Assembly: GCA_965637545.1 (NCBI GenBank) | Contig: OZ281498.1 | Location: 9,052,001-9,116,000 of the forward strand | Origin: Phallusia mammillata | Taxonomy: Eukaryota | Length of the DNA stretch: 64,000 bases | Reading direction: 5' to 3' | Shown: piece after piece, positions 16,582-42,464 of the stretch | Numbering within the stretch: the stretch's first letter is position 1 | Layout: every line of letters starts with the position of its first letter | Position numbers and translations under genes: made by a program | Notes under the pieces: generated by a model | What the model was told of the DNA's origin: nothing | The model's input: the letters and a program-made list of their open reading frames with translations, nothing else | Databases searched by the model: none

Positions 16582-17793
16582 TACAGAAATATTACAAGAC
16601 CAGAGTCACAGTATAGCGACCGGTACATGTTTACTCAATGTACGTTGAAGTATGGATCTTTCGGTTTATTGTACGCGCTAATAAACATAAAAGTCAAACG
16701 CGTCAGAAAAGAAGAAAAAATATCGAAGTTTAAACACACGTTCGTGGTTGCTTGATGTCGGTACCATAAAGGTAAAAAAATGGCGCCTGTAGGTTTGTGG
16801 AAGTGCGTTTTTTCCTCGCGCTCGAGGCCTTTTGATGAGTTCTGCGGCATTGCACGCCCTGAACAGTGGGTAACTAGACGTCGAGTAAGTTCTGCTGGGT
16901 AAAAGGCAAGCAAGGAATACAAAAACATATTTCAACTTTTGGATTGTTTAAGGTTTATTAAGAGTAGAAAAGTTTGTCTTGGATGTTGGCAGATGTTGAA
17001 AATATAGTCCAAGCCAGTAGTTCGTAAATCAGAGGCAGGATCTGTAAATCGCCATGGTGGACCGTCCAAAGCTAGTGTGTTAGTACAATGCTAATTTACA
17101 TGATATTAACTTTGTAAGCGTAATTTATTTTGGAGTGAGGACCAGTCGCCTGTGCCAACTAATGCATCTTTTGTTCTTTGTTTTGTGTAATTGTTTCAAA
17201 CGGCTTAGTATTTTAATATTACATTCTTGGCGTTGCTTTAAACCAGGTTCGTACGTTTGATAGGTTGCTGAATACGAGTTTAAAATCTTTTGCCAACTAA
17301 TCATTCCAATTTTTAACACAGTATGAGAGGAGTGAAAACGGCTACGTGTTTTCTGTTGGCGTCGAAATAACTTGATTTAGATTCGAGAGTAATTTTTAGA
17401 CTACATAATTAAATGAAGAGCATATAATGGCATATAATGTGTACATGCATCTGCTACCATAACATTATTTGATTATTGTGTTTTTTGACATAATATTACG
17501 TAAATTCTCATGGAGATTTTGTCAGCATGCAGTAGTCTAGAAACTACGCAAGACAAAATAAAAATGCGGTTTAAATGAAGTAGTGATTATGGTTGAAAGG
17601 TTGAACACGAAGTAACTTGGTAGTTTCTAGGCTATGTTGAATATGAAGTAAGATTTTTCACTTGCCTCAACGCACCTGTGCTGTGCTGTGGTGAAGCATT
17701 GACCGCGGCGAAGAGGTTGTGTGTTTGCGCTGAATGTCTACGCAATGTGTCGAGGTGGGTAGACTTAAACGGCGATCTGTGCTCGCTTTAGGA

Positions 17794-18013
17794 AAAGGTG
17801 CTCAACCTTTTCGCTATGACGGCCGCATCGCTGATACTTATGTCGCCAACGGCCGCTTAGTGTTTGCTTGTTTTTGTTTTAATATTACTGACGACTAACT
17901 GCGCCTGAAAAGTCCAGAATAATATTACTGATATACCATCTAATTGCGCCTGAAAAGTTCAGATTAATTCTAAGTAGATGTATACATCGAGCAAAACAGG
18001 TTGTGCACCCCTG
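17794..18013. mobile_element. hAT MITE (left TIR degenerate)
   Basis: AAAGGTGCTCAACC...GGTTGTGCACCCCTG; 8-bp TSD CTTTAGGA; related left end at ~60723. Confidence 0.75.
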
Positions 18014-18045
18014 CTTTAGGACGTTGCGTTGGGGAAGTAGGAGGG

Positions 18046-18503
18046 CAGTGGTTCTTAACCTTTTTGGTGCGGTTTCCCATTAAAGTAAATCACCAAGTTC
18101 AAATTTCCCCCTCTGTTATTTTTATAATAATGTTTTGTGCCAAACATTAACAAAAAAATTATTCTTTGATCGAAATAATTTTGTGAAGCGATTTGGTCGG
18201 GACCTTAAAGGTATACTGCGATTTTATTTAGTTTGATTAGTGATTTCTTGAGAAAGTAATATCGTGTGGAATTTTGAAAAATCTCAGGTGCTTGCATTAG
18301 TCATTTATTGCATCACAATCAACAGATCAAATGCATTTTTTCGCGAACAATAATAAAGTCATTGATACTTGTATTAAATTAACTTTCAATGATTAATTTC
18401 AACCCACGGGCCCGAGTTTGTTGACTTCTGATTCACATAATTTCCCTCTAAAACCATTAAATTTCCCACTAGTGGGAAATTTCCCACCGGTTAAGAACCA
18501 CTG
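18046..18503. mobile_element. hAT MITE, 458 bp
   Basis: TIRs CAGTGGTTCTTAACC / GGTTAAGAACCACTG; perfect TSD TAGGAGGG. Confidence 0.93.
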
Positions 18504-18804
18504 TAGGAGGGGAAGGAGGTGGACTTAAACGTCGATCGGTGCTCGCTTTGCGAGTTTGTGTGTTTGAGCTGAATGTCTACGCAATGTGTCGTATATTGCA
18601 GAATCGAGGGGAAGAAGGGAGACTGGAAAGTCGATCGGTGCTCGCTTTGCGAGTTTGCGTGTTTGATACATGACCTAATTGGACGATGTAATTGTGTTGA
18701 TACATGATGTCCTAAATTAAATTGTATATTATGTGTTTTGTTGTGCAGACTGCGTTAGCAAGACAGAGTAATTTTCAAATGTTGTTTATCGTACTACAGC
18801 TAAA

Positions 18805-19011
18805 ATGAACAGGGGTAACAGTAATGACACTGTGTTGGACGAATTTTACGAATCAAATGGATTCTCCCGCACTCTTCGTGTCTGGACAGTTGTAATGGAA
18901 AACGGAAGCCTTCAACGCCGAGAAGAACTTCGCGCGTTCGTGGATCATGAGATTTGCACTTACGCTGGACAACCTCTCTGCAGTCCTACAGGAGACGAGA
19001 TTTCGGAGTAA
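18805..19011 (+). CDS. Uncharacterised 68-aa acidic microprotein, paralog 1
   Basis: MNRGNSNDTVLDEFYESNGFSRTLRVWTVVMENGSLQRREELRAFVDHEICTYAGQPLCSPTGDEISE; AAAATG start context; colinear without indels with the copies at 31531 and 42258, with many third-position changes. Confidence 0.75.
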   Translation: MNRGNSNDTVLDEFYESNGFSRTLRVWTVVMENGSLQRREELRAFVDHEICTYAGQPLCSPTGDEISE

Positions 19012-21639
19012 ATGTGAAAAAATGTGGACTTGTGGTGCTGAGAAACAATGTTATTGGGAAGATTAACTTGTATAGTCAATTAGTTTTTAGCCATTCCATT
19101 CCACAAAGTTCATATTAGAAACAATGAATGAGTTTAAAACTTTTGTTTTTAGAAGTTCAACTTTTACAATTTACTCTTTTTGACTTGTTCCAAATATGTC
19201 GGTTAGTTTAATTTCTTTACTGTACCCGTCCTTGTTATTGATCTTAAAAACACGTTTTTCCAAACCCCTTTATTCTTCATTTATTTAGTTTCTTTTGTGT
19301 ATGTCTATTGACCCCGTCCCCGCTTCATGACTATGTTGTTGTGTTACAAACAACACACGAGGCACGCGCGCACTGTGCCCATTTACACACACGCATGCAC
19401 ACTTTTTTTCATTTTTTGACTAGTATGGAGTTGCATAATGTGATACATGATAATAAAAACTACGATGTCAAGTAGGAATGGACCGAATCAGCTAAATTTG
19501 GGTTTGGCACAAACCGAATATTGGGCTCGTTTGACATAAAACATAAGTTTTTCTACCAGGTTAACATTGGTGCTACACAACATAGGATAATTGTGTTTTA
19601 TCATCTTAGCTACTTTACTTAGCTAAACTTTAACTTACAACCAGATATTAACAAACACCAGGCACAAGGGGTATTAGCTTAAACATGCTGCTTTGAATTT
19701 GAATAAATTGTGCTTTCTGGCGATTGTTCTGGCGATTGTTTTTTTTTTGTGATTTCGAGGGCAAGTTGTGCATTTAATTTACCACAGGGGTGACTGAACA
19801 AGACTATGTGGAGCGACGGACAGTACCATTCTAATACAACGGTAACAAGCTTCTATAAACTTGTTTCGCTTTCACGCCTTCTATACCAACTGCGAAGTTT
19901 TTGTAACTTTTCATTTGGTAAATCTAGTGTAACTCTGTGTAAAATGTATACACTTCCCTTCTGCCGAACCCCTTTGTTCCCAATTCGAATGACAAAAGAA
20001 GGCAGTTGTTTGCGCATAATTGTAGTATAATCTTCTCAAATTTTCCTCAGACTAACTAGATGCCTGCATTTTGCTGTAAGAATTAAATTGGGTTTTGACT
20101 GTTACCTAAAGCTTTCGTGTTGCTGACTAAATCTAACTGCCCATCTCTGCTCAAGAGGCAGGAACTTTCATACAAAAAAAATTCTCATAGAGCGAGATTT
20201 CGATCGCTTTCTTACCGAAAACAGCTGCATGTTGTAACATGCTTATTTTTCAAGCATTAGTTGTGACGTCACCATGAAAAAGTTACTGAAGTTAAAAGTG
20301 TTTTCTCGCCAAATAGTCATGATATGTATCGCTGCGTGTAGAGTTTAATTCCTGTTCACGGGAGAGCGCTTTCACAAAAACGGGCACCACCAAACAAACA
20401 CCCCGAACTGGGCGCGACCAAACAACAACCCTCGCAGGTTACTTGTCACGTGGTCCAGTTGACAGAAAAAAAGAGCGAGGCGCACCCTTGTCTCTTCTTT
20501 CTCTCTGCTCTTTTCTTTGTTAGGATCCGCCAATGATCACTTGGAGGTGATTGAAAAAAAAACGAAATTTTCTTTTTCGCAAAAGCTTCAAAGGAAATTG
20601 ATAATGGCTGTGCACAGCAGGAAATAATACATACACTACGATTCGCACGAGAAGTTATGAGTGAGTTGAAGTTATGGCTTACTTCAAATCATGTTCATCT
20701 GTTTTCTTAAAATATTTACCTTTTGTTTTTGAGAACAGTTATTTAACTTGTGCGGTGAAAATTAGCAGCTGGAAAAACATTAGCAGTTTTAGAAAAGTAA
20801 AGTTTATCTCCCATCGACATTTACGTGGGGTTAGGTTTTCGCAATGTTTGTTGAACTTTTGACGAGCCGCACTTATTTAAAAATTAGGGCAGCTGTGCGT
20901 CTCACCGTAGGTTATTGTATAAAATGGATCGCTTTTTCATCAAAAATAGTTGCGTGTTATTACATGCTTATTTTTCACGCAGTGAATTTGAGCTAAAAGA
21001 TAAAGCGATTGTGTTGAACCTGAAAGTCCCTGGTTAAACTTAAGTGGCCTTTTAATCACAGTGACAAAAATGGCAGACTTACTGGATGAAATCGTGTGTT
21101 GTATTTTTTTCCTCCAAAATTTGTTTCAGAATCGAACGGTTGTGTTGTTATCTTGAAAATTTAAGCTCCGTTTATTTATTTGTTTATTATATTGCAGAAA
21201 ATACGAAATATAAAAACATATTAGAGATGTTTAAATTGATAAGTCGGAGACGTGTTTTTGACTAAATAATCAGAGCTGAGCTTCCGTATTTCTATTTCAC
21301 CAGATCCTCAATTGTTTTATATTAATTGATTTCTTCATGTTTTGACAATATCAGGTTAGAAAAATATTCCAGAAAAAAAACTTAGACTTTTTTGTATGCT
21401 AAGGTTTTGATCGCAAATATTTCGTATCCCAAAGTGATTAGAGCTGTTTATTGGAAACGGAAAAGTAGAAGCGGTACAGGCTAGCAGCAGCAATTATGGG
21501 TTGTCATCAACCGGGGATTTCCCATTTTATGCCAAAAGAGAAAATCAGCTGATTTCCTTTTCAACGATACCCGCGCGGAAAGAAGAGATTAAGGCGACCT
21601 TCTGAGATTCAACGCATCATGTCAAGACTCAATGGTGGT

Positions 21640-23660
21640 AGTGGCTGGTGTAGACAGAGTCGTCGATCGCTGCTCGCTTTAGCGCCTGGTATGTTTGACT
21701 TCTACGCATCGTGTCGAGGCGCAATGGTCGTGGTTTGGGTAGACTGGGTCGTCGATCACTGCTCGCTTTCGAACGTCGTGTCTTTGCCTCACTTCTTCGC
21801 ACAGCGTCGGGGCGAAATAGTCGTTGTTTGGGTAGACTGGGTGGTCGATCGCTCCTCGCTTTAGCGCCTGGTCTGTTTGACTTCTACGCATCGTGTCGAG
21901 ACGCAATGGTTGTGGCTGTGGTAGACTGAGTCGACGATCTCTGCTCGCCAAAAGTCTATTGGCCCATGTTTATCGTCTTTAAAAAGTGCTGAAATTGAAC
22001 ACATTAGGGCAATTGGGGTTGTGGAAAAGGTTTGCATTTCCACGTGATAATTTACCACAAAAACATGTTTTTGAAAATGCATTGTTTCTTTTTTGGGAAA
22101 ACAACGAAACAAAACAAACGAATTTGAACATTAACACCAGGAATCGAAATAAAGAAAGATCGTAAAATCACCAGATGTAATTTAATGCAAGTTTAGAATA
22201 TTACTTCTAGTGATTGTCCTGTAACTTTGGCATCCGTTCGTACTTCGCAGCAAGTCAAGGCAAAATGCCGTGATGTCGACCGTTACTCTAAGCGTGCCAC
22301 TGTGAGACAACAAAGGAAAGAAGGCAAGGAAAAAAAGGCAAAAGATTGCAAATATAACAATACTATATGACGAGTAATGACCAAAGAGGTGCTGGGTAAA
22401 TTCGAAGAGAAAGGAATAGAAAGGAAATGAGGTTTAGCGCAGGTCGTGGTTTGGGCAGATTGGGTCTACGATCGCTGCTCGCTTTAGCGCCTGGTATGTT
22501 TGACTTCTACGCATCGTGTCGAGGCGCAATGGTCGTGGTTTGGGCAGACTGGGTCTACGATCGCTGCTCGCTTTTTAAACGTTGTGTGTTTGCTTGACTT
22601 CTACGCATCGTGTCGAGGCACAATGGTCTTGGCTGAGGTAGACTGGGCCGTCGATCGCTGCTCGCTTTAGCGCCTGGTATATTTGACTTCTACGCATCGT
22701 GTCGAGGCGCAATGGTCGTGGTTTGGGCAGACTGGGTCTACGATCGCTGCTCGCTTTTTAAACGTTGTGTGTTTGCTTGACTTCTACGCATCGTGTCGAG
22801 GCACAATGGTCTTGGCTGAGGTAGTCTGGGCCGTCGATCGCTGCTCGCTTTAGCGCCTGGTATGTTTGACTTCTACGCATCGTGTCGAGGCGCAATGGTC
22901 GTGGTTTGGGTAGACTGAGTCGTCGATCGCTGCTCGCTTTCGAACGTCGTGTCTTTGCCTGACTTCTTCGCACAGCGTCGGGGCGAAATAGTCGTGGTTT
23001 GGGTAGACTGGGTGGTCGATCGCTGCTCGCTTTAGCGCCTGGTCTGTTTGACTTCTACGCATCGTGTCGAGGCGCAATGGTTGTGGCTGTGGTAGACTGA
23101 GTCGTCGATTGCTGCTCGCCAAAAGTCTATTGGCCCATGTTTATCGTCTTTAAAAAGTGCTGAAATTGAACACAATAGGGCAATTGGGGTTGTGGAAAAG
23201 GTTTGCATTTCCACGTGATAATTTACCACAAAAACATGTTTTTTGAAACTACATGAGAAATTGCGTTGTTTCTTATTTGACAAATCAACGAGAGAAAAAA
23301 ACGAATTTGAACATTAACATCTAAGAATCGGAATAAACAAATATCGTAAATCACCAGATGTAATTCAATATAGGTTTTGAAAATTACTTCCAAGTGACTG
23401 TCCGATGACTTTGCATCCTTACGTACTTCGTAGCAAATCAAGGCAAAATGCCGTAATGTCAACCGTTACTCTAAGCGTGCCACTGTGAGACAACGAAGGA
23501 AAAAAAGCAAGGAAAAGAAAAAGGCAAAAGATTGTGAATATAACAATGCGATATGGAGAGTATTGACCAGAGAGGTGTTGGGTAAAATCGAAGAGAAAGG
23601 AAAGGAAAAGAAAAGGAAGGAAAGGAAAGGAAAGGAAAGGAGGTTTAGCGCAGGTAACGT
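21640..23660 (+). repeat. Tandem segmental duplication (period 1171 bp) of satellite monomers plus an AT-rich spacer
   Basis: 21679->22850 and 21861->23032 are both offset by 1171; spacer 21950-22440 is homologous to 23121-23650. Confidence 0.9.
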
Positions 23661-23715
23661 TCATGAACAAAGATAGTTTCGGAGGAGAATATTTGGCGGC
23701 GCGCAAGAGGAACGT

Positions 23716-26700
23716 CGATCGCTGCTCGCTTTAGCGCCTGGTATGTTTGACTTCTACGCATCGTGTCGAGGCACAATGGTCTTGGCTGGGGTAGACTGAG
23801 TCGTCGATCGCTGCTCGTTTTAGCGCCTGGTATGTTTGACTTCTACGCATCGTGTCGAGGCACAATGGTCTTGGCTAGGGTAGACTGAGTCGTCGGTCGC
23901 TGCTCGTTGTAGCGCCTGGTATGTTTGACTTCTACGCGTCGTGTCGAGGGGCATTAGTCGTGGCTGGGGTAGACTGGGCCGTCGATCGCTGCTCGCTTTC
24001 GAACCTTGTGTGTTTGCTTGACTTCTACGCATCATATCGCGGCGCAATAGTCGTGGCTGGGGTAGACTGGGCCGTCGATCGCTGCTCGCTTTCGAACCTT
24101 GTGTGTTTGCTTGACTTCTACGCATCATATCGCGGCGCAATAGTCGTGGCTGGGGTAGACTGGGCCGTCGATCGCTGCTCGCTTTAGCGCCTGGTATGTT
24201 TGACTTCTACGCATCGTGTCGAGGCGCAATGGTCGTGGTTTGGGCAGATTGGGTCTACGATCGCTGCTCGCTTTAGCGCCTGGTATGTTTGACTTCTACG
24301 CATCGTGTCGAGGCGCAATGGTCGTGGTTTGGGCAGACTGGACGGCGATCGCTGCTCGCTTTCGAACCTTGTGTGTTTGCTTGACTTCTACGCATCATAT
24401 CGCGGCGCAATGGTCGTGGCTGGGGTAGACTGGGTGGTCGATCGCTGCTCGCTTTCGAACCTTGTGTGTTTGCTTGACTTCTACGCATCATATCGCGGCG
24501 CAATAGTCGTGGCTGGGGTAGACTGGGCCGTCGATCGCTGCTCGCTTTCGAACCTTGTGTGTTTGCTTGACTTCGACGCATCATATCGCGGCGCAATAGT
24601 CGTGGCTGGGGTAGACTGGGCCGTCGATCGCTGCTCGCTTTCGAACCTTGTGTGTTTGCTTGACTTCTACGCATCATATCGCGGCGCAATAGTCGTGGCT
24701 GGGGTAGACTGGGCCGTCGATCGCTGCTCGCTTTCGAACCTTGTGTGTTTGCTTGACTTCTACGCATCATATCGCGGCGCAATAGTCGTGGATGGGGTAG
24801 ACTGTGCCGTCGATCGCTGCTCGCTTTCGAACCTTGTGTGTTTGCTTGACTTCTACGCATCATATCGCGGCGCAATAGTCGTGGCTGGGGTAGACTGGGC
24901 CGTCGATCGCTGCTCGCTTTCGAACCTTGTGTGTTTGCTTGACTTCTACGCATCATATCGCGGCGCAATAGTCGTGGCTGGGGTAGACTGGGCCGTCGAT
25001 CGCTGCTCGCTTTCGAACCTTGTGTGTTTGCTTGACTTCTACGCATCATATCGCGGCGCAATAGTCGTGGCTGGGGTAGACTGGGCCGTCGATCGCTTCT
25101 CGCTTTCGAACCTTGTGTGTTTGCTTGACTTCTACGCATCATATCGCGGCGCAATAGTCGTGGCTGGGGTAGACTGGGCCGTCGATCGCTGCTCGCTTTA
25201 GCGCCTGGTATGTTTGACTTCTACGCATCGTGTCGAGGCGCAATGGTCGTGGTTTGGGCAGACTGGGCCGTCGATCGCTGCTCGCTTTCGAACCTTGTGT
25301 GTTTGCTTGACTTCTACGCATCATATCGCGGCGCAATGGTCGTGGCTGGGGTAGACTGGGCCGTCGATCGCTGCTCGCTTTCGAACCTTGTGTGTTTGCT
25401 TGACTTCTACGCATCATATCGCGGCGCAATAGTCGTGGCTGGGGTAGACTGGGCCGTCGATCGCTGCTCGCTTTCGAACCTTGTGTGTTTGCTTGACTTC
25501 TACGCATCATATCGCGGCGCAATAGTCGTGGCTGGGGTAGACTGGGCCGTCGATCGCTGCTCGCTTTCGAACCTTGTGTGTTTGCTTGACTTCTACGCAT
25601 CATATCGCGGCGCAATAGTCGTGGCTGGGGTAGACTGGGCCGTCGATCGCTGCTCGCTTTAGCGCCTGGTATGTTTGACTTCTACGCATCGTGTCGAGGC
25701 GCAATAGTCGTGGCTGGGGTAGACTGGGCCGTCGATCGCTGCTCGCTTTCGAACCTTGTGTGTTTGCTTGACTTCTACGCATCATATCGCGGCGCAATAG
25801 TCGTGGCTGGGGTAGACTGGGCCGTCGATCGCTGCTCGCTTTCGAACCTTGTGTGTTTGCTTGACTTCTACGCATCATATCGCGGCGCAATAGTCGTGGC
25901 TGGGGTAGACTGGGCCGTCGATCGCTTCTCGCTTTCGAACCTTGTGTGTTTGCTTGACTTCTACGCATCATATCGCGGCGCAATAGTCGTGGCTGGGGTA
26001 GACTGGGCCGTCGATCGCTGCTCGCTTTAGCGCCTGGTATGTTTGACTTCTACGCATCGTGTCGAGGCGCAATGGTCGTGGTTTGGGCAGACTGGGCCGT
26101 CGATCGCTGCTCGCTTTCGAACCTTGTGTGTTTGCTTGACTTCTACGCATCATATCGCGGCGCAATGGTCGTGGCTGGGGTAGACTGGGTGGTCGATCGC
26201 TGCTCGCTTTCGAACCTTGTGTGTTTGCTTGACTTCTACGCATCATATCGCGGCGCAATAGTCGTGGCTGGGGTAGACTGGGCCGTCGATCGCTGCTCGC
26301 TTTCGAACCTTGTGTGTTTGCTTGACTTCTACGCATCATATCGCGGCGCAATAGTCGTGGCTGGGGTAGACTGGGCCGTCGATCGCTGCTCGCTTTCGAA
26401 CCTTGTGTGTTTGCTTGACTTCTACGCATCATATCGCGGCGCAATAGTCGTGGCTGGGGTAGACTGGGCCGTCGATCGCTGCTCGCTTTAGCGCCTGGTA
26501 TGTTTGACTTCTACGCATCGTGTCGAGGCGCAATGGTCGTGGTTTGGGCAGATTGGGTCTACGATCGCTGCTCGCTTTAGCGCCTGGTATGTTTGACTTC
26601 TACGCATCGTGTCGAGGCGCAATGGTCGTGGTTTGGGCAGACTGGACGGCGATCGCTGCTCGCTTTCGAACCTTGTGTGTTTGCTTGACTTCTACGCATC

Positions 26701-29700
26701 ATATCGCGGCGCAATGGTCGTGGCTGGGGTAGACTGGGTGGTCGATCGCTGCTCGCTTTCGAACCTTGTGTGTTTGCTTGACTTCTACGCATCATATCGC
26801 GGCGCAATAGTCGTGGCTGGGGTAGACTGGGCCGTCGATCGCTGCTCGCTTTCGAACCTTGTGTGTTTGCTTGACTTCGACGCATCATATCGCGGCGCAA
26901 TAGTCGTGGCTGGGGTAGACTGGGCCGTCGATCGCTGCTCGCTTTCGAACCTTGTGTGTTTGCTTGACTTCTACGCATCATATCGCGGCGCAATAGTCGT
27001 GGCTGGGGTAGACTGGGCCGTCGATCGCTGCTCGCTTTCGAACCTTGTGTGTTTGCTTGACTTCTACGCATCATATCGCGGCGCAATAGTCGTGGCTGGG
27101 GTAGACTGGGCCGTCGATCGCTGCTCGCTTTAGCGCCTGGTATGTTTGACTTCTACGCATCGTGTCGAGGCGCAATGGTCGTGGTTTGGGCAGATTGGGT
27201 CTACGATCGCTGCTCGCTTTAGCGCCTGGTATGTTTGACTTCTACGCATCGTGTCGAGGCGCAATGGTCGTGGTTTGGGCAGACTGGACGGCGATCGCTG
27301 CTCGCTTTCGAACCTTGTGTGTTTGCTTGACTTCTACGCATCATATCGCGGCGCAATGGTCGTGGCTGGGGTAGACTGGGTGGTCGATCGCTGCTCGCTT
27401 TCGAACCTTGTGTGTTTGCTTGACTTCTACGCATCATATCGCGGCGCAATAGTCGTGGCTGGGGTAGACTGGGCCGTCGATCGCTGCTCGCTTTCGAACC
27501 TTGTGTGTTTGCTTGACTTCGACGCATCATATCGCGGCGCAATAGTCGTGGCTGGGGTAGACTGGGCCGTCGATCGCTGCTCGCTTTCGAACCTTGTGTG
27601 TTTGCTTGACTTCTACGCATCATATCGCGGCGCAATAGTCGTGGCTGGGGTAGACTGGGCCGTCGATCGCTGCTCGCTTTCGAACCTTGTGTGTTTGCTT
27701 GACTTCTACGCATCATATCGCGGCGCAATAGTCGTGGATGGGGTAGACTGTGCCGTCGATCGCTGCTCGCTTTCGAACCTTGTGTGTTTGCTTGACTTCT
27801 ACGCATCATATCGCGGCGCAATAGTCGTGGCTGGGGTAGACTGGGCCGTCGATCGCTGCTCGCTTTCGAACCTTGTGTGTTTGCTTGACTTCTACGCATC
27901 ATATCGCGGCGCAATAGTCGTGGCTGGGGTAGACTGGGCCGTCGATCGCTGCTCGCTTTCGAACCTTGTGTGTTTGCTTGACTTCTACGCATCATATCGC
28001 GGCGCAATAGTCGTGGCTGGGGTAGACTGGGCCGTCGATCGCTTCTCGCTTTCGAACCTTGTGTGTTTGCTTGACTTCTACGCATCATATCGCGGCGCAA
28101 TAGTCGTGGCTGGGGTAGACTGGGCCGTCGATCGCTGCTCGCTTTAGCGCCTGGTATGTTTGACTTCTACGCATCGTGTCGAGGCGCAATGGTCGTGGTT
28201 TGGGCAGACTGGGCCGTCGATCGCTGCTCGCTTTCGAACCTTGTGTGTTTGCTTGACTTCTACGCATCATATCGCGGCGCAATGGTCGTGGCTGGGGTAG
28301 ACTGGGCCGTCGATCGCTGCTCGCTTTCGAACCTTGTGTGTTTGCTTGACTTCTACGCATCATATCGCGGCGCAATAGTCGTGGCTGGGGTAGACTGGGC
28401 CGTCGATCGCTGCTCGCTTTCGAACCTTGTGTGTTTGCTTGACTTCTACGCATCATATCGCGGCGCAATAGTCGTGGCTGGGGTAGACTGGGCCGTCGAT
28501 CGCTGCTCGCTTTCGAACCTTGTGTGTTTGCTTGACTTCTACGCATCATATCGCGGCGCAATAGTCGTGGCTGGGGTAGACTGGGCCGTCGATCGCTGCT
28601 CGCTTTAGCGCCTGGTATGTTTGACTTCTACGCATCGTGTCGAGGCGCAATAGTCGTGGCTGGGGTAGACTGGGCCGTCGATCGCTGCTCGCTTTCGAAC
28701 CTTGTGTGTTTGCTTGACTTCTACGCATCATATCGCGGCGCAATAGTCGTGGCTGGGGTAGACTGGGCCGTCGATCGCTGCTCGCTTTCGAACCTTGTGT
28801 GTTTGCTTGACTTCTACGCATCATATCGCGGCGCAATAGTCGTGGCTGGGGTAGACTGGGCCGTCGATCGCTTCTCGCTTTCGAACCTTGTGTGTTTGCT
28901 TGACTTCTACGCATCATATCGCGGCGCAATAGTCGTGGCTGGGGTAGACTGGGCCGTCGATCGCTGCTCGCTTTAGCGCCTGGTATGTTTGACTTCTACG
29001 CATCGTGTCGAGGCGCAATGGTCGTGGTTTGGGCAGACTGGGCCGTCGATCGCTGCTCGCTTTCGAACCTTGTGTGTTTGCTTGACTTCTACGCATCATA
29101 TCGCGGCGCAATGGTCGTGGCTGGGGTAGACTGGGCCGTCGATCGCTGCTCGCTTTCGAACCTTGTGTGTATGTTTGACTTCTACGCGTCGTGTCGAGGG
29201 GCATTAGTCGTGGCTGGGGTAGACTGGGCCGTCGATCGCTGCTCGCTTTCGAACCTTGTGTGTTTGCTTGACTTCTACGCATCATATCGCGGCGCAATAG
29301 TCGTGGCTGGGGTAGACTGGGCCGTCGATCGCTGCTCGCTTTCGAACCTTGTGTGTTTGCTTGACTTCTACGCATCATATCGCGGCGCAATAGTCGTGGC
29401 TGGGGTAGACTGGGCCGTCGATCGCTGCTCGCTTTAGCGCCTGGTATGTTTGACTTCTACGCATCGTGTCGAGGCGCAATGGTCGTGGTTTGGGCAGATT
29501 GGGTCTACGATCGCTGCTCGCTTTAGCGCCTGGTATGTTTGACTTCTACGCATCGTGTCGAGGCGCAATGGTCGTGGTTTGGGCAGACTGGACGGCGATC
29601 GCTGCTCGCTTTCGAACCTTGTGTGTTTGCTTGACTTCTACGCATCATATCGCGGCGCAATGGTCGTGGCTGGGGTAGACTGGGCCGTCGATCGCTGCTC

Positions 29701-31200
29701 GCTTTCGAACCTTGTGTGTTTGCTTGACTTCTACGCATCATATCGCGGCGCAATAGTCGTGGCTGGGGTAGACTGGGCCGTCGATCGCTGCTCGCTTTCG
29801 AACCTTGTGTGTTTGCTTGACTTCGACGCATCATATCGCGGCGCAATAGTCGTGGCTGGGGTAGACTGGGCCGTCGATCGCTGCTCGCTTTCGAACCTTG
29901 TGTGTTTGCTTGACTTCTACGCATCATATCGCGGCGCAATAGTCGTGGCTGGGGTAGACTGGGCCGTCGATCGCTGCTCGCTTTCGAACCTTGTGTGTTT
30001 GCTTGACTTCTACGCATCATATCGCGGCGCAATAGTCGTGGATGGGGTAGACTGTGCCGTCGATCGCTGCTCGCTTTCGAACCTTGTGTGTTTGCTTGAC
30101 TTCTACGCATCATATCGCGGCGCAATAGTCGTGGCTGGGGTAGACTGGGCCGTCGATCGCTGCTCGCTTTCGAACCTTGTGTGTTTGCTTGACTTCTACG
30201 CATCATATCGCGGCGCAATAGTCGTGGCTGGGGTAGACTGGGCCGTCGATCGCTGCTCGCTTTCGAACCTTGTGTGTTTGCTTGACTTCTACGCATCATA
30301 TCGCGGCGCAATAGTCGTGGCTGGGGTAGACTGGGCCGTCGATCGCTTCTCGCTTTCGAACCTTGTGTGTTTGCTTGACTTCTACGCATCATATCGCGGC
30401 GCAATAGTCGTGGCTGGGGTAGACTGGGCCGTCGATCGCTGCTCGCTTTAGCGCCTGGTATGTTTGACTTCTACGCATCGTGTCGAGGCGCAATGGTCGT
30501 GGTTTGGGCAGACTGGGCCGTCGATCGCTGCTCGCTTTCGAACCTTGTGTGTTTGCTTGACTTCTACGCATCATATCGCGGCGCAATGGTCGTGGCTGGG
30601 GTAGACTGGGCCGTCGATCGCTGCTCGCTTTCGAACCTTGTGTGTTTGCTTGACTTCTACGCATCATATCGCGGCGCAATAGTCGTGGCTGGGGTAGACT
30701 GGGCCGTCGATCGCTGCTCGCTTTCGAACCTTGTGTGTTTGCTTGACTTCTACGCATCATATCGCGGCGCAATAGTCGTGGCTGGGGTAGACTGGGCCGT
30801 CGATCGCTGCTCGCTTTCGAACCTTGTGTGTTTGCTTGACTTCTACGCATCATATCGCGGCGCAATGGTCGTGGCTGGGGTAGACTGGGCCGTCGATCGC
30901 TGCTCGCTTTCGAACCTTGTGTGTTTGCTTGACTTCTAATCATCATATCGCGGCGCAATAGTCGTGGCTGGGGTAGACTGGGCCGTCGATCGCTGCTCGC
31001 TTTCGAACCTTGTGTGTTTGCTTGACTTCTTTGCATATCGTCGAGAAGCAGTAGTCGTGGCTGTTGTAGACTGGGCGGTCGCTTTCGAATCTTGCGTGTT
31101 TGCACTGACTTTTGCGCATCATGTCGAGGCGCAGTAGACTGGGTCGTCGATCGCTGCTCGCTTTTAAACGTGGTGTGTTTGCACTAAATTCTAGGCATCA
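23716..31200 (+). repeat. CpG-rich satellite array (93-bp A and 88/89-bp B monomers) with a 2304-bp higher-order repeat
   Basis: A monomer TCGAACCTTGTGTGTTTGCTTGACTTCTACGCATCATATCGCGGCGCAATAGTCGTGGCTGGGGTAGACTGGGCCGTCGATCGCTGCTCGCTT; B monomer starts TAGCGCCTGGTATG; HOR starts at 24185, 26489 (partial, 642 bp), 27131 and 29435. Confidence 0.97.
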
Positions 31201-31530
31201 TGTCGAGGCAAACGAAGTATGGATTAGATGTTGTTTCGCTGAACATTCGTATGTTGGACAGGACGTTGTTTTGCATTGTAGAAAAGCTGAAACTCATTTT
31301 AAGTCGAAAATGAAAACGGCTCGACAAATACTACTGCGTTTCAGTGACGGCGTTGATGCATCGTTGACATGCCTTTGGTTAATAAGTTATAGTGTGTTAT
31401 CTTAAACGTTACTTCTGAATTGATGATTGGTGTTTTTCTTGTATAGGTTGCACCAAATGCTAAAGCAAGACAGCGAATTAGTTAAATATTTCAAATTTTC
31501 GCTTCAGTCTTGAGTTTTTCCGCACTTAAA

Positions 31531-31737
31531 ATGGATGGGGATGACGGTAATGACATTCTGTTGGAAGAATCGTACGAATCTGATGGATTTTTCCGCACTA
31601 TTCGGGTGTGGACAGTTGTAATAGAAAATGGAACCCTTCAACGCCATGAAGAACTTCGCGCATTCGTTGACCAAGATACATTTACATATGCTGGTCAACC
31701 ACTCTGCTGTCCTACTGGAGATGAGATTGCCGAATAG
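31531..31737 (+). CDS. Uncharacterised 68-aa acidic microprotein, paralog 2
   Basis: MDGDDGNDILLEESYESDGFFRTIRVWTVVIENGTLQRHEELRAFVDQDTFTYAGQPLCCPTGDEIAE; AAAATG start at 31531 (the TTG at 31510 in the ORF track is probably UTR); 57/68 identical to paralog 3. Confidence 0.8.
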   Translation: MDGDDGNDILLEESYESDGFFRTIRVWTVVIENGTLQRHEELRAFVDQDTFTYAGQPLCCPTGDEIAE

Positions 31738-34529
31738 ACTGAAAAAATTGGGATCCGTTCTGGTGCTGAGAAACAATCGCAGAGAAAGATTTAATTGTAA
31801 TCATTTTTTGCAAACGCCATTCCATTAAGTTCACCTTCAAAACAATGACTGGGGTTGAAACTGTTGTTTTCAAAAGGTCAACAATTCGAAATTTATTTAA
31901 TTTTTAACCTTTATCCCAGATCTGCCGACCGTGTTCGATTTTTTTCAAAACCTGTCTGTGCTTCATTGATTTTTTGTGTATTTTTTTCCATGTTCCAAAG
32001 GGACTGCAGCTGCTTGAAGCGATTTTTCACCAATGATGAAGTTCCAATTGTATGTTTGTATGGTCGCTGAAAGCTAATTAATGTACGTGGTAGCGCATTG
32101 TGTAAGTTTATTTATGCGAATGTCAAATTTTTACAGACATTAATTGAATCTCTATTATCATCATTTTTATTTCTTCACCAATCATCTTTAGATTGGATGA
32201 AACAATGTTATATATCCATTCTTAAATTGCTATCTATGTCAAGCATTTTTCCCTCCTCATCACTCTTGGAGTTGTGAAATTTACCAAGTGCTATAACGTA
32301 GTTGCCTGGTTTTCTCAACTTTTTTCAAAATTTCCAGCTTGAATTTGTATTTGATGCTTGCGTAACATGGATTGTGCGTTGGTTTTAGGAATGTATATTG
32401 ATAGTAAAGCTGTTCTACAAACATTCCAAGTAATCTAATATTGTATAAAATGAGTTTTATATTTTATGAAATATTTGGTATGAAGTTTCATAGATGAATT
32501 AACTACAAGGCATTTAATAAGAAGACAGTTTTATGGATTTTTAGCCTGATTATTATTTTTTAAATATTTTGCTGTTTGTCATGTACAAAATGTTGCTTTG
32601 TTCTTTTAGTGCTTCATAATACAACATTGCTGTTTTAAAACGCGTGATAAGCATTTTAAAACAAGCACTAAGAGTCATGAGAGATTCACAGCACGTGTCG
32701 TTGCATTTTTGAACTTCTATCAATTTTATGTTACAATATACACGTTTTTAAATGGTTACAAACACAGATATTGGTGCTTTGATTATTATTTTACAATTTA
32801 AAGCCTTAAGCGACAAACTTTTCGTTTTACAACCGATACGTTTGCATTATTTTGCCATGTCCAACGCAAAAACAAACATTTTTGGCACATAGAAATGTAG
32901 CATAACTAATCGAATGAAAAAACTCTTGAATTTGTGATCATGTGATTTTTTTGCTTCCACTTGCTAAGTGGAAGCTACCAACGTGAGAACTCAATTCACA
33001 AAAGATTGCGAAGTACCCATAGGTGGCGCAAAGAGCATTACGAATAAAAACAAAATTGTGTGAAAATGCTGACGGTAAGTATGCGGGTTGGGGTGATGTT
33101 ATACAAAAAAAGTAACATTAAAACTTACATAAAACTTGGTTCCTAACGTTTAATTTATTTTCTGAAGCTGAAACAATTGTACGCTTTTTACGCCCTCTAT
33201 CGGAATTTATCAAAATTTTCTGATTTTAGATCCAATTTTAATAGTACTGAGTAAAATTGGTTGACAAAACTCGTGTTACGTTCTTTGTCAATACGCGTCC
33301 TCAGACAAGACAAACTTCCTGGTTTCACACCTGGCCTGGCCTTGCCCGCTGGTTGGCTTGCTCGTAATTTAAAGAAATGTTCAGCAAAAAGTTATTGATC
33401 GACGCCAAAGTTTTTTAACTAAGTAATACAGACATTACTGTCGTCTACTAGGATGCTGGTCACGTGAGCGCTGTGGTCAATCAGAGACGACAATTTAGTT
33501 CCAGGTGAGGTGGTGACGTAAAGTAAAGTCCATCGCACATACAACATAAATAATAAACTACCAATTAGCATTTTTAAACGATCGATATTTTATTTGCTGA
33601 GTACCCATCAGTAAATTTACTCCCATTGCGTGATAATTGTCAATACCATCGTTGTGGTGTTCATAGCGCAGTGCACTGCAAGTAAATGTCTTTCACTACA
33701 GTGTGTGTATTTCAACACAAGTTGTTGAAGCATCAGCATAAAGCCGATAAACATAAAACGAAAAACCTTTTATAGCACAAAATTCTTGGAACGGAATTCA
33801 TACACACACAGAAGGACACTAAGTTATCGGCAGGCGCATAACTGGATACAGAAAAAAATATCACTTAAAAATCAATTAACTTTGAACAACCAGAATAACA
33901 AAAGCAGGTGCTTAGAAATAATATCGCTGTCAAGAGTCAATATGGTAATACATTATTCCAAAATTTACTGTACATTTTATGTGCTTTAATAATTAAATTT
34001 TAAAATCTTCTAAAACAAGAATCATAGCCGTAAAATACAAAACATCTTGTTTCAGGTACCAGTTTTTTTTAGCGGGGACCACGCAGAATAAAGCTTTTAC
34101 ATCCGACCAAATTGTGTTTGTGGTACTCCATTTTTCTCCTAACATCCAGAGGCGCAGTTGAAAAGTTGGCAAACACCCACCTGTCTCGGGCGGAGCGGAG
34201 TTCCAGTAAGCGATCGGGACCGACCGAGTTCGGGCCGGGTTCGGGCTCCAATTTCAAGCCTGTTTACAACTCTGATCCGACAAAATTGTGTCACTCCATC
34301 AAGATTTTGGTGTAACACAAGCCAACTCAACCCAAAACGAGTTATATATAGCGAACTGCCAGTGTGACGGAACGGGCTTGCTCTGTTTAAACAAAAGATC
34401 CTCACAGGCTGGAGGAGCGAAGATTTAGTTTCTTTTTGAGCGTTACTTTTTTCTTTGCAGTCGGTCTGTAGTTCAGATTGCGCTCGAGTCTTGTCCAAAT
34501 GGTTCGAGTTCTGCTGACAAGAAGCAGCA

Positions 34530-39080: not shown

Positions 39081-39442
39081 AATATCTTATCTTTTAATGA
39101 AACAACATAGGTTTTGAAATTTAAATCGGAAGATTTCGCCGTTTTACAAGATAATTAGTAAGTACGCGTTTTTAATTGAATACAAAAAACGAGAAAATAC
39201 GGTTTTGCCTTGCATAACTGGTTAATGTAGGCGTAAAAAATAGTGGAAAATTGGGGTACTATTGGAGAACGAGTTTGCGTCGAGAAAATTGTAACGAATT
39301 ATACGATTACTTCTGCCAGTGACAGAATTACTGCCTCGGTGTCTCTCTTGAATTTATGCGCGACTGTTTGCGCAATTTTGAACGCACGTGTGTGTACAAA
39401 GGTTTGCACGTGTGACCGCCGACGTTCGACCGACTTTCTGAT

Positions 39443-39830: not shown

Positions 39831-40619
39831 CTTTCCGATCAGTTCGACCAGGGCGACACCGTAGGGAGATTGAGAAGCACTATGACCTCTTTTTTATTTG
39901 ACTTTTTCGCGTCCTTCGGTCGCGAACCCTTCGGTCGCCGTTGGAGAGAATATGATGTTTTTCTATTTTTGCATTGTGTTTCTTCGTACCGCTCGTTTAT
40001 TAGCGCACAATCAACAAAAAATGCCGTTAGAATAGATATGTTGGAATAACGCGGGGAAACATTTGTGTTAATTTACTGTAAAGGTTGTAGGTCGCGATTT
40101 GTCGACTGCGGGGCGCATTTTGCACAGGGTTAACAGCTTTGCTGCTAAACAAAATCGTGGAATAACACATTTCTGATGGTTAACTGTAAAGATCAAAAAT
40201 GTAAGCTGAAATGTAGCGATGGTGTTGGGCAGTAACTGGCCATTTAATCCACAGGGAGAGAAAACTGTGAGAGATTGTATGTTGTATTAGTTTGTGCTGC
40301 AGAATTTGTTTTAGAATCGATCGACTTTGTTGTTATCTTCTAAACTTTGGCTGTGTTTAATTATTTGTTGTATCCCGGAATAGTCACAGTTTAACAAATC
40401 AAATGTCAGAGAGACCTGTTTGTGAAGAAATATTTGGAGTTTTTTCTATTCCAACAAATCATTTTCTGTTCAAATCCAGTTGTTTGTTAACTAAATCTTT
40501 TGACAATTTTAGGTTGGAAAAGTAGTTTATTGCTAAATACAACCCAGTTCACCGTGTTTCCGTCAGGATTAACAGTTTCAACCCAACATGCGATAACACA
40601 TTAGTTAGAAATTCCGCGG

Positions 40620-40880
40620 CTATAACAAAGTGGTGTTTCGAAATAGCCTGACTTACACGCGTCGAGGCGCAATTGTTGTGACTGGATAGGTTGGGTTGCC
40701 GATTGCTGCTCGCTTAGCGCTTTGTGTGTTTGTATTGACTGAAATGCCGCGGCTCTAACGAAGTGGTGTTTCGAAATGACCTGACTTCCACGCGTCGAGG
40801 CGCAATTGCTGCGACTGGATAGGTTGGGTCGCCGATTGCTGCTCGCTTAGCGCTTTGTGTGTTTGTACTGACTGACTTCT
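40620..40880 (+). repeat. Two tandem degenerate satellite-family monomers (~115-bp period)
   Basis: TGACTT.CACGCGTCGAGGCGCAATTG.TG.GACTGGATAGGTTGGGT.GCCGATTGCTGCTCGCTTAGCGCTTTGTGTGTTTGTA occurs twice; homologous to the array monomer. Confidence 0.8.
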
Positions 40881-40943
40881 ACATATTGTGCGGACGTAAC
40901 TGCTGATGGGCATGTAAATGCGACCAACTTATGAACAGGGAGT

Positions 40944-41360
40944 CGAACCGCTTGTCATATGGGTTCAGGTTCGGTTCGGGTTCACTTGGTTTTGTTTTTA
41001 AGGGTTCGGGTTCAGGTCCGTTTTTAAAAATGTATATTTTCGGGTTCGGGTTTTGTTCCGGTTTGGGCAAGTTATCCGGTTCGAACCGGTTTGCGGTTTT
41101 TAAACCGGTTTAAGTTTTTATTTGTTTCAATTCAATTCTACCCATCATCTACCTGGCCTTAGCAAACGCCAAAATAATTTTGCCCGTGTGCTGTTATCTT
41201 TGACACGCCCTATATGTGTTATCTCGCATATTCTTCAGTGCGCTGTTTTGAACAAAAAATCATAAAATATAAAACAGACTGCATTTTTTTACTGGTTCGG
41301 TTCCGGTTCGGGTCCAACGCCAAACAAAATATAGGGTTCAACTCCGGTTTGGGTTTTTAG
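40944..41360. mobile_element. Remnant of a hAT-like element with (CGGGTT/CCGGTT)n subterminal repeats
   Basis: Dense GGTTCGG/AACCGG motifs in two clusters; no intact TIR or TSD found. Confidence 0.5.
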
Positions 41361-42257
41361 AAAATCGTAATTTCTAAAATCGTAAAAATCGTAAACAGGC
41401 GAGTCACTCGATCAGCAGTAGAGAAAAAGGCAAAGATAAAGGACAAGGCGGTAAAGGCGCTTGTAGATTTGTATACAACTATACTATAGTATAGTAGCAT
41501 TCCTCAATCAATTAAGAAAGGCCAACGAAGCTAACGTTTTTGGCTGAGGCAGTGTAGTGGAATGCAATAAAAAGCAAGCAAAGCAAATATACAGGTGAAA
41601 GTTGTCCCTTTTTCAAGTGAGCTTATTTTTGTGCAAGGGTGCAGTGCTACGAAATAAAAGAAATGTATTTTTGTGTTGTGATGCGTAAGAAATCAGTTTA
41701 GTTTATTACTTTTTAACTCAGCGTATAGTGTCCCCACAGTAAATATGTCAAAAAGAATGCACATTGCATCTTGTAAATGTTTCGTACATCGCTCGAAAAG
41801 GCCTTTGTTTGTTTATGTTTTGATATGGTTTTATGTTTTGATACGGTTATTGAATGTGAATAAAGGTAAAATGAAAGGTCTGTTGTACACGTGCGTTAGC
41901 TGTTAAGAAACCTCCGATATAGTGAAAAACGGAACCTGACCATGGCAACTGTGCACTGACACACATGATTAGATAAGTCAACAAACCGGCTCCAAAGATA
42001 GACATCCAACAAGATAGTTGCAGAAGAAATGTTTACCACTTTACTTGATTGTCACATTACAAATCGCTTTAATACTTGTTTTAATTTTGGTTTCAGCCTT
42101 GTTCATGCTACGTGCATCATGAATGAAATATTTTGCCCCAACATTTTAATGACCAATGTTTCTGTTGTACAGTCTGCGCTAAATGCGAAAGCAAGACAGC
42201 GAAATAGTTGAATATTTTAAATTTTTGCTACAGTCTTGAGTTTTGCCACACTTCATA

Positions 42258-42464
42258 ATGAACGAGGATGACGGTAATGACATTGTGCTGGAAGAATCGT
42301 ACGAAGCTGATGGATTTTTCCGCACTCTTCGTGTTTGGACAATAATGACCGAAAATGGATGCCTGCAACGCCGTGAAGAACTCCGCGCATTCGTGGATCA
42401 AGACACATTTACATATGCTGGGCAACCACTCTGCTGCCCGACAGGCGACGAGATTGACGAATAG
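42258..42464 (+). CDS. Uncharacterised 68-aa acidic microprotein, paralog 3
   Basis: MNEDDGNDIVLEESYEADGFFRTLRVWTIMTENGCLQRREELRAFVDQDTFTYAGQPLCCPTGDEIDE; the in-frame TGA at 42237 upstream makes ATG 42258 the likely start. Confidence 0.8.
   Translation: MNEDDGNDIVLEESYEADGFFRTLRVWTIMTENGCLQRREELRAFVDQDTFTYAGQPLCCPTGDEIDE

What the first reader, a model, noticed from the sequence alone, without database searches (positions are those of the whole stretch)
17700..42464. Satellite birth inside a gene duplication: the same monomer lies upstream of all three microprotein paralogs but has expanded only in copy 2
Seen: a few degenerate monomers precede paralog 1 (17700-18660) and two precede paralog 3 (40620-40880), whereas a ~9.5-kb array (21640-31200) precedes paralog 2. 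Non-repeat upstream landmarks are shared by copies 2 and 3 (21000-21160 vs 40200-40340; TTTGACAAT.T.AGGTT.GAAAA at ~21340 vs ~40500). Inference: the monomer was part of the ancestral unit (leader intron, UTR or promoter), and one paralog captured a run-away expansion. This is a rare side-by-side view of ancestral and amplified states, and array length could tune expression of paralog 2.
Basis: partly seen in the sequence, partly recalled or inferred. Interest (0 to 1): 0.8.

Follow-up and report, generated by a model that had tools for sequence, protein, structure and literature searches.

The report
Locus-private tandem repeat amplified beside one paralog
Three old tandem copies of a 68-residue sea-squirt gene each carry the same ~90-base GC-rich sequence just upstream, and in the middle copy alone it has grown into a 9.6-kb array; this is a clean but not new-in-kind example of how a satellite-like repeat is born from a short seed.

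Summary
Three 68-aa ORFs on the + strand (18805, 31531, 42258) are real, old paralogs, with dN/dS 0.15-0.22 and dS 0.56-0.84, and they are the only copies in the 240-Mb genome. A profile built from array monomers alone finds just five other matches in the window. All lie on the + strand upstream of paralogs 1 and 3. Pattern, BLAST and profile searches of the whole genome find the monomer nowhere else, so it is not a dispersed repeat.

Units 2 and 3 are collinear on both sides of the monomers, and the monomer tree mirrors the gene tree.

Four refinements:
- Copies 1 and 3 are not pristine. Each has its own local duplications (99- and 133-bp periods) and MITE insertions.
- The ancestor probably already held at least 1.4 tandem monomers.
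- The array is layered. Its old 5' blocks are about 89% alike, while its 25-monomer higher-order copies are 99.5% alike.
- The genome is an ascidian carrying the Ciona spliced leader. The conserved YAG site before each ORF is most likely a trans-splice acceptor, which puts the monomers in the outron or promoter.

No RNA data could be obtained, so exon, intron or promoter status and any effect on expression are untested. This is a new member of a known kind.

The parts
18805..19011 (+). Paralog 1 ORF (68 aa plus stop)
   Evidence: conserved frame, dN/dS about 0.2 against P2 and P3
31531..31737 (+). Paralog 2 ORF (68 aa plus stop)
42258..42464 (+). Paralog 3 ORF (68 aa plus stop)
   Evidence: 84% aa identity to P2; the only frame with a coding signature
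17734..17800 (+). P1 monomer piece 1, preceded by the junction motif at about 17700-17730
18046..18503 (.). MITE inserted into the P1 monomer tract. It has 15-bp terminal inverted repeats, flanking direct repeat TAGGAGGG, and more than 1400 candidate copies in the genome
18506..18666 (+). P1 monomer pieces 2 and 3 (99-bp period)
18749..18804 (+). P1 conserved leader after a T-rich tract plus CAG acceptor; second candidate acceptor ends at 18799
21041..21366 (+). P2 upstream landmark, homologous to 40233-40524 and unique in the genome. It includes a core about 85% conserved and a weak donor-like AG|GTTRGA motif at 21353
21605..21948 (+). Array, old 5' block 1 (about 3.8 monomers)
21949..22430 (+). 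Non-repeat spacer 1, found only at this locus
22431..23119 (+). Array, old 5' block 2 (about 7.5 monomers; 89/94-bp dimer)
23120..23712 (+). Spacer 2. It is the 86-89% identical copy of spacer 1 and holds a (GAAAG)n run
23713..31213 (+). Main array: about 80 monomers of 93/89 bp. A 25-monomer (2304-bp) higher-order unit occurs about three times, plus a 7-monomer partial; copies are 99.5-99.6% identical
31447..31530 (+). P2 conserved leader after T-rich plus TAG acceptor; second acceptor ends at 31507; 18-codon uORF at 31457-31513
31738..32653 (+). P2 conserved non-coding downstream part of the duplicated unit
40233..40524 (+). P3 upstream landmark
40608..40900 (+). P3 monomer tract: two 133-bp units (92.6% alike), each a junction piece plus one monomer, then about 27 nt of a further monomer
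40936..41372 (.). High-copy dispersed repeat (more than 1000 candidates, 91-95% identity) inserted between the P3 monomers and the acceptor
42173..42257 (+). P3 conserved leader after T-rich plus CAG acceptor; second acceptor ends at 42233; uORF at 42183-42239
42465..43963 (+). P3 conserved downstream part of the unit, interrupted by an insertion of about 450 bp (about 43008-43466)

Best explanation
An ancestral single-exon microprotein gene of an ascidian carried, 0.1-0.3 kb upstream of a 3' splice-type acceptor, a GC- and CpG-rich stretch of about 90 bp. That stretch was probably already present as one to two tandem copies. The gene with its upstream region was duplicated twice in tandem, P1 splitting off first and then P2 from P3, so each paralog inherited the seed.

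All three seeds later changed locally. P1 gained a 99-bp-period duplication and a MITE. P3 gained a 133-bp duplication and a MITE. In P2, unequal exchange or replication slippage built a short array. A 1.17-kb block (monomers plus a captured spacer) was then duplicated. Very recently, a 25-monomer higher-order unit was amplified to give the 7.5-kb main array.

The acceptor before each ORF is most likely a spliced-leader trans-splice site. On that reading the monomers lie in the discarded outron or in the promoter, not in the mature mRNA, and this would explain why the expansion is tolerated.

Shown: homology, privacy to the locus, order, relative ages, and coding constraint.
Inferred: the mechanism of expansion, the trans-splicing, and the location of the promoter.
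For: Real, old paralogs:
- dN/dS is 0.15-0.22 and dS is 0.56-0.84, with third-position changes dominating.
- There are only three copies in the genome.
- In-frame stops lie upstream of each ATG.
- No other frame is conserved as protein.

Monomer homology beyond chance: a profile built from the array alone gives E 1e-11 to 2e-4 at five sites, all upstream of P1 and P3 on the + strand.

Private to the locus:
- The exact 16-mer core occurs only here, and 1-2-mismatch hits elsewhere equal the reversed-pattern control.
- BLAST with array, P1 or P3 monomers hits only this locus.
- The profile search gave 99 matches, all at this locus.

Collinear flanks and junction.

Tree: the P1 clade has support 100/99 and the P3 clade 100/100. 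P3 groups with the old 5'-edge array monomers.

Layered ages: higher-order copies are 99.5-99.6% identical, the 5' block duplication is 88.9% identical, and the paralogs stand at dS 0.56 or more.

Ascidian with a spliced leader: the Ciona 16-nt leader plus GT occurs 3789 times against 5 for the control, including a 553-bp tandem array (leader sequence from PMC7986045).

Ciona background from the literature:
- About 50-80% of Ciona genes are trans-spliced at the first functional acceptor.
- Outron median length is about 450 bp.
- The region near the TSS is G+U-rich (PMC4691747, PMC11155486).

Sequence features of the three units:
- Each unit has a T-rich tract plus YAG exactly where inter-paralog homology begins.
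- The monomers are G+T-rich on the sense strand, 0.60-0.64 against 0.52 for the background.
Against:
- The genome-wide profile search scored only the best 150 of about 39,000 first-look candidates, so very diverged copies elsewhere could be missed.
- All three paralogs hold at least two tandem monomers that cluster by paralog. The size of the ancestral tract therefore cannot be fixed, and contraction in P1 and P3 is possible.
- P1 lacks the upstream landmark.
- Array length and the higher-order pattern rest on one assembly.
- No orthologous locus from another species was available to polarise events.
Confidence: 0.72

Rival explanations
1. Reverse polarity. The ancestral unit already carried a sizeable array, and P1 and P3 lost most of it by contraction and decay. 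P2 kept it and keeps turning it over. On this reading the locus shows array persistence and death, not birth.
For: - All three units contain tandem monomers, not a single copy.
- The P2 and P3 tracts both end in a truncated monomer.
- P2 has old, diverged edge blocks 74-89% alike, which shows an array has existed there for a long time.
- Tandem arrays are known to expand and contract (PMC12692304).
Against: - The periods differ (99, 133 and 89/93 bp). The 133-bp unit of P3 includes the junction piece, so its duplication is a separate, later event (92.6% identity).
- The bulk of the P2 array is 99.5% identical higher-order copies, so it was made recently.
- No relic monomers fill the gaps in P1 or P3 apart from those listed.
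Confidence: 0.15
2. The monomer is the internal tandem repeat or a fragment of a mobile element that landed independently next to the three paralogs, so it is not part of the gene unit.
For: - TE-embedded tandem repeats are a common source of satellites (PMC12692304).
- This region is rich in MITEs.
- Other notes on this genome describe transposons with internal satellites (unchecked AI notes).
Against: - No copy exists anywhere else in 240 Mb by exact-core, BLAST or profile search.
- Orientation and position relative to the ORF are the same three times.
- Flanks are collinear on both sides in P2 and P3.
- The monomer tree equals the gene tree.
- The tracts have no terminal repeats around them.
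Confidence: 0.04
3. The monomers sit in a conventional 5' intron. A non-coding leader exon lies in the upstream landmark (about 21.1-21.35 kb and 40.3-40.5 kb), is spliced from the conserved AG|GTTRGA site to the acceptor before the ORF, and the array is simply intronic ballast.
For: - The landmark has a conserved core and a conserved AG|GT motif at homologous positions.
- A strong acceptor lies before each ORF.
Against: - The donor is weak, with T at +3.
- P1 has no landmark at all.
- No RNA data are available.
Confidence: 0.25
4. The array is an artefact, or mis-sized, in the assembly. On this reading a shorter or different repeat was expanded by the assembler.
For: Near-identical 2.3-2.9-kb blocks are the kind of sequence that assemblers mis-size. 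No reads could be laid on the region.
Against: - The array has ordered internal structure: diverged edges, two spacer-bearing blocks at 89% identity, 29 monomer variants in a consistent higher-order pattern, and scattered private substitutions.
- Collapse or expansion would change the copy number, not the existence of the array.
Confidence: 0.05

Closest known systems
Satellite DNA 'birth, dissemination, clustering' / seed model (Ruiz-Ruano et al. 2016, as reviewed in PMC12692304)
   Same: A tandem duplication gives at least two monomers. Short arrays at several places act as seeds, and one seed amplifies locally into a long array with higher-order structure while the others stay short.
   Different: Here the seeds were spread by tandem duplication of a gene unit, not by transposons or other dispersal. 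The family has only three sites, all within 25 kb. The amplified array is 9.6 kb, or 0.004% of the genome. That is far below classical satellites and there is no sign of heterochromatin.
Gene-associated minisatellites / VNTRs in promoters and first introns (for example human INS and MAOA upstream VNTRs; from general knowledge, not tested here)
   Same: It is a single-locus tandem array of units tens of bases long, lying just upstream of or inside the 5' part of a transcription unit. It is GC-rich, and an effect of length on expression is plausible.
   Different: The unit of 89-93 bp and about 93 copies lies at the upper end of that class. A 25-monomer higher-order repeat is unusual for a VNTR. 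Polymorphism and any expression effect are untested here. The presence of unexpanded paralogous copies is the special feature.
Euchromatic satellite repeats next to genes (Tribolium TCAST, Drosophila 1.688; PMC3411249, PMC4537270, PMC7642928)
   Same: Satellite-type monomers or short arrays lie close to protein-coding genes in euchromatin and may modulate them.
   Different: Those repeats are copies of abundant genome-wide satellites scattered near many unrelated genes. This monomer exists only at this one gene family.
SL trans-spliced ascidian genes with discarded outrons (Ciona; PMC4691747, PMC11155486)
   Same: The genome holds thousands of copies of the Ciona leader. Each ORF is preceded by one or two closely spaced U-rich/YAG acceptors. 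The upstream sequence is G+T-rich on the sense strand.
   Different: Trans-splicing of these three genes is not shown. If the TSS were upstream of the array, the outron of P2 would be about 10 kb, against a Ciona median of about 0.45 kb.

Membership tests
Satellite DNA (classical sense) | Head-to-tail tandem monomers with concerted homogenisation | tested here: met
   About 93 monomers of 89-93 bp; TRF reports 93% matches.
Satellite DNA (classical sense) | Higher-order repeat structure | tested here: met
   A 25-monomer, 2304-bp unit occurs about three times at 99.5-99.6% identity.
Satellite DNA (classical sense) | High abundance: long arrays, often at several loci or in heterochromatin | tested here: not met
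   There is one 9.6-kb array in 240 Mb and no other locus.
Minisatellite / gene-associated VNTR | Single-locus tandem array with a unit of tens of bases, in the 5' region of a gene | tested here: met
   The array lies between the unit's upstream landmark and the ORF of paralog 2.
Minisatellite / gene-associated VNTR | Copy-number polymorphism between individuals | not testable with these tools
TE-derived tandem repeat | Monomer also present inside dispersed mobile-element copies | tested here: not met
   Exact-core, BLAST and profile searches hit only this locus.
Tandem gene duplicates under purifying selection | Conserved frame, dN/dS well below 1, same start and stop | tested here: met
   dN/dS is 0.15-0.22, and all three ORFs have 68 codons.
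SL trans-spliced gene (ascidian) | Genome encodes SL RNA with the leader followed by a donor | tested here: met
   The leader plus GT occurs 3789 times against 5 for the control, including a 553-bp tandem array.
SL trans-spliced gene (ascidian) | Functional acceptor (U-rich tract plus AG) upstream of the ORF with no strong upstream donor | tested here: inconclusive
   Acceptor-like sites are conserved in all three units, and homology starts at the T-rich tract. This rests on sequence only.
SL trans-spliced gene (ascidian) | mRNA reads that begin with the leader joined at that acceptor | not testable with these tools
   No runs could be obtained.
Array of spliced mini-exon units (seen elsewhere in this genome according to earlier notes) | Conserved donor and acceptor in every unit, or frame-preserving unit length | tested here: not met
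   The candidate AG is absent from the 89-bp monomer type. The 89- and 93-bp units are mixed and break every frame. No splice motif is conserved across the paralog monomers.
Structured RNA gene array | Stable or covarying secondary structure, or an Rfam match | tested here: not met
   Fold z-scores run from -1.3 to +0.7, the consensus energy is -1.4 kcal/mol, and there are no Rfam hits.

The most novel reading that the evidence does not exclude
The monomer could be the family's own promoter/TSS module or outron start. It is GC- and CpG-rich, G+T-rich on the sense strand, has a core about 30 nt long kept at 80-83% identity in all three paralogs, and always lies just upstream of the acceptor. 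Ascidian mRNAs receive their 5' end by spliced-leader trans-splicing. Tandem amplification of such a module would therefore be invisible in the mature mRNA. On this reading trans-splicing makes 'promoter satellites' possible, and paralog 2 now sits behind about 90 tandem initiation modules that could raise, buffer or silence its output.
Probability: 0.15. Interest if true: 0.65.

Novelty: new member of a known kind. Interest (0 to 1): 0.4.

Why it matters
Most satellites are met only after they have spread, when their origin can no longer be read. Here the seed, its genomic context and the amplified product are all preserved within 25 kb. There is also an internal clock of three steps: paralog dS of 0.56-0.84, a block duplication at 11% divergence, and higher-order copies at 0.5% divergence. 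The locus therefore documents each step of the seed-to-array model in a chordate.

It also offers a natural experiment. Three paralogs carry about 3, about 93 and about 2 monomers upstream. That set-up can test whether such an array alters transcription. In an ascidian it can also test whether trans-splicing shields a gene from changes in its 5' transcribed region.

The microprotein itself has no detectable relative in 1.8 billion representative proteins, yet it is under purifying selection. It is thus a lineage-restricted gene family of unknown function.

Tried and rejected
RNA evidence:
- The look-up of encoding contigs had no record of P2 or P3.

Identity of the protein:
- Pfam, the word search, the PDB profile search and the ESM Atlas gave nothing.
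- The 1.84-billion-protein HMMER search returned only three long repeat proteins whose scores are sums of short chance stretches.
- The AlphaFold model is a three-strand sheet with pLDDT 71.5. It has no Foldseek match in the PDB at E up to 0.001.

Rejected readings of the monomer:
- Structured RNA: folds are no better than shuffles and Rfam finds nothing.
- Coding repeat or mini-exon array: the long ORFs on both strands follow from a 93-bp unit without stops, and the 89-bp units break them.
- TE fragment.
- General regulatory motif: the 16-mer core with up to 2 mismatches is no commoner outside the locus than its reversed control.

Other searches that came up empty:
- The upstream landmark was sought near P1 with 3 mismatches allowed, and none was found.
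- Further coding exons were sought in the 1.5 kb shared by P2 and P3, and none was found.

Full report
WHAT IS THERE

The window is G000:C5:9052001-9116000 of a 240-Mb assembly. Three ORFs of exactly 68 codons lie on the + strand at 18805-19011 (P1), 31531-31737 (P2) and 42258-42464 (P3). They are the only three matches in the genome.

Pairwise dN/dS is 0.15-0.22 and dS is 0.56 (P2-P3) to 0.69-0.84 (against P1). Differences are concentrated at third codon positions. These are therefore real protein-coding genes that duplicated long ago, with P1 splitting off first. In-frame stops lie between the upstream acceptor-like site and each ATG. In the 1.5 kb that P2 and P3 share, no other frame is conserved as protein. 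Each gene is thus a single coding exon.

The protein has no relatives in any library searched:
- no Pfam family;
- no word-search homologue;
- no PDB or Atlas relative;
- in the 1.84-billion-protein HMMER search, only three long repeat proteins whose scores add up chance stretches.

AlphaFold gives a three-stranded sheet at moderate confidence, with no significant fold match.

THE REPEAT

TRF and an anchor scan give about 93 monomers of 89 or 93 bp between 21605 and 31213. The array is layered:
- Block 1 (21605-21948) is followed by a 482-bp non-repeat spacer.
- Block 2 (22431-23119) is followed by a second copy of the spacer.
- The two monomer-plus-spacer blocks are 88.9% identical over 838 bp.
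- The spacer occurs nowhere else in the genome.
- The main array (23713-31213) is built from a 25-monomer, 2304-bp higher-order unit present about three times, plus a 7-monomer partial. Copies differ at only 8-9 positions in 1.7-2.3 kb.

This confirms in passing the separate first-stage note on the same stretch.

CHECK OF THE OBSERVATION

A profile made only from array monomers, searched against the rest of the window with all filters off, finds five significant matches and nothing else:
- 40652-40732 and 40783-40865 (E about 1e-11);
- 18576-18665 (E 2e-6);
- 17737-17792 (E 1.5e-5);
- 18518-18565 (E 2e-4).

All five are on the + strand and all lie upstream of P1 or P3. The stretch 21041-21366 aligns with 40233-40524 (E 1.6e-21). 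Both short motifs occur only at those two places, against 0.02-0.04 expected by chance. P1 has no such landmark.

IS THE MONOMER A DISPERSED REPEAT?

- The exact 16-nt core occurs only in this locus. Hits with one or two mismatches elsewhere are no more frequent than for the reversed control.
- BLAST with array, P1 or P3 monomers hits only this locus.
- A profile of array, P1 and P3 monomers returns 99 matches, all here. One caveat applies: only the best 150 first-look candidates were scored.
- The landmark is likewise unique.

By contrast, two true dispersed elements were found inside the units. A 458-bp MITE at 18046-18503 splits the P1 monomer tract. A 437-bp high-copy repeat at 40936-41372 lies between the P3 monomers and the ORF.

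WAS THE MONOMER PART OF THE ANCESTRAL UNIT?

The evidence says yes:
- Units 2 and 3 are collinear on both sides: landmark, monomers, acceptor, ORF, then about 1 kb of downstream sequence.
- A short junction motif (CCGCGG, then GAAG-A/T-GG) precedes the first monomer in all three units.
- The P2 and P3 tracts both end in a truncated monomer.
- In a maximum-likelihood tree the P1 monomers form one clade (100/99) and the P3 monomers another (100/100). P3 groups with the old 5'-edge monomers of the array. This is the topology of the gene tree.
- Monomers of different paralogs differ by 20-35%, which is comparable to neutral divergence between the paralogs. The bulk of the array is 99.5% identical.

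The order of events is therefore gene duplications first, then an early short array in P2, then block duplication, then recent higher-order amplification.

Copies 1 and 3 are not frozen ancestors. P3 carries a later 133-bp duplication (92.6% identity) whose unit includes the junction piece. P1 has a 99-bp period. Both carry MITEs.

Every unit has at least two tandem monomers, and monomers cluster by paralog. The ancestor probably already had about 1.4-2 monomers. A longer ancestral tract that shrank in P1 and P3 cannot be excluded without an outgroup species.

By size (0.004% of the genome, one locus) the array is a large minisatellite and not a classical satellite.

GENE MODEL AND LIKELY MECHANISM

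Earlier notes of this scan name the genome as the ascidian Phallusia mammillata (unchecked). I tested the ascidian part. The 16-nt Ciona spliced leader given in PMC7986045, followed by GT, occurs 3789 times against 5 for the control, including a 553-bp tandem array.

In Ciona about half to four fifths of genes are trans-spliced at the first functional acceptor. Minor acceptors often lie within 50 bp of the major one. Outrons have a median length of about 450 bp. The 5' transcribed region is G+U-rich (PMC4691747, PMC11155486).

All three paralogs have a T-rich tract plus YAG exactly where inter-paralog homology begins (exon starts at 18749, 31447 and 42173). Each has a second such site 50-60 nt further on. 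The monomers are G+T-rich on the sense strand (0.60-0.64 against 0.52). They are GC- and CpG-rich islands in all three units. Their core of about 30 nt is kept at 80-83% identity, against 53-67% for the 5' half.

My preferred reading is that these are SL trans-spliced genes and that the monomers lie in the outron or promoter, which would make the expansion harmless to the mature mRNA. A conventional leader exon in the landmark, with a weak conserved AG|GTTRGA donor, is the main alternative and partly overlaps with this reading.

None of this could be tested. Whether array length tunes P2 expression is likewise untested. The only indirect evidence is that P2 has not evolved faster than P3 relative to P1 (dN 0.152 against 0.167).

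OTHER READINGS EXAMINED AND REJECTED

- Structured RNA genes: folds are no better than shuffles, there is no covariation and no Rfam hit.
- Coding repeat or mini-exon array, as reported elsewhere in this genome. The long ORFs on both strands are a by-product of a stop-free 93-bp unit. The interspersed 89-bp units break every frame, and no splice motif is shared by the monomer types.

COMPARISON WITH WHAT IS KNOWN

The locus fits the published birth, dissemination and amplification ('seed') model of satellite DNA (reviewed in PMC12692304). It also fits the class of gene-associated minisatellites. What is unusual is that the seeds were spread by duplication of a gene unit, and that the family is private to one gene cluster. 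As a result the seed, its context and the product can all be read side by side.

That makes it a well-documented new member of a known kind, not a new kind. I score interest at 0.4. The more novel idea is that the monomer is a promoter or outron module whose amplification trans-splicing makes tolerable. I give that about 15%.

Noticed in passing
window 31457-31513 and 42183-42239: An 18-codon upstream ORF is conserved between the P2 and P3 leaders: 14 of 18 residues and 89% nucleotide identity, which is higher than in the main ORF. The changes are mostly non-synonymous, so the constraint looks nucleotide-level. P1 has instead a 9-codon uORF at 18779 that overlaps the main ATG.
   Followed up: partly
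window 18046-18503: A 458-bp MITE with 15-bp terminal inverted repeats (CAGTGGTTCTTAACC) and flanking TAGGAGGG repeats. It has more than 1400 first-look candidates in the genome at 92-99% identity, so the family was recently active.
   Followed up: partly
window 40936-41372 and about 43008-43466: Two more insertions lie in unit 3. One is a 437-bp high-copy repeat (more than 1000 candidates, 91-95% identity). The other is an element of about 450 bp in the 3' region whose ends resemble the MITE termini (CAGTGGTTCCCAA ... GAGCACTG).
   Followed up: partly
G000:C3:11108338-11147465 (loci L037-L039 are other copies): The Ciona-type 16-nt spliced leader followed by GT occurs 3789 times in the genome. 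This includes a regular 553-bp tandem array on contig C3, presumably the SL RNA gene cluster.
   Followed up: no
window 32589-32619 and 43900-43930: A 31-nt block is identical between the downstream regions of P2 and P3 (ATGTTGCTTTGTTCTTTTAGTGCTTCATAAT), close to the end of the duplicated unit. It looks like a T-rich tract plus AG, and its function is unknown.
   Followed up: no
window 23820-31137, both strands: Mechanical ORFs of up to 298 aa run through the array on both strands, because the 93-bp monomer has no stop in several frames. They end wherever an 89-bp monomer shifts the frame, and there is no evidence of coding.
   Followed up: yes
window 49785-50138 (+): An open frame resembles a mitochondrial carrier (SLC25-type) repeat, with a motif like ...VVRTRLREE...LY.G...L.RQ. 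It is probably an exon of a neighbouring gene. The resemblance is recalled from memory and was not searched.
   Followed up: no
window 34576-35343 and 38151-38955: A pair of repeats 77-79% identical lies in the P2-P3 intergenic region, probably copies of a dispersed element.
   Followed up: no
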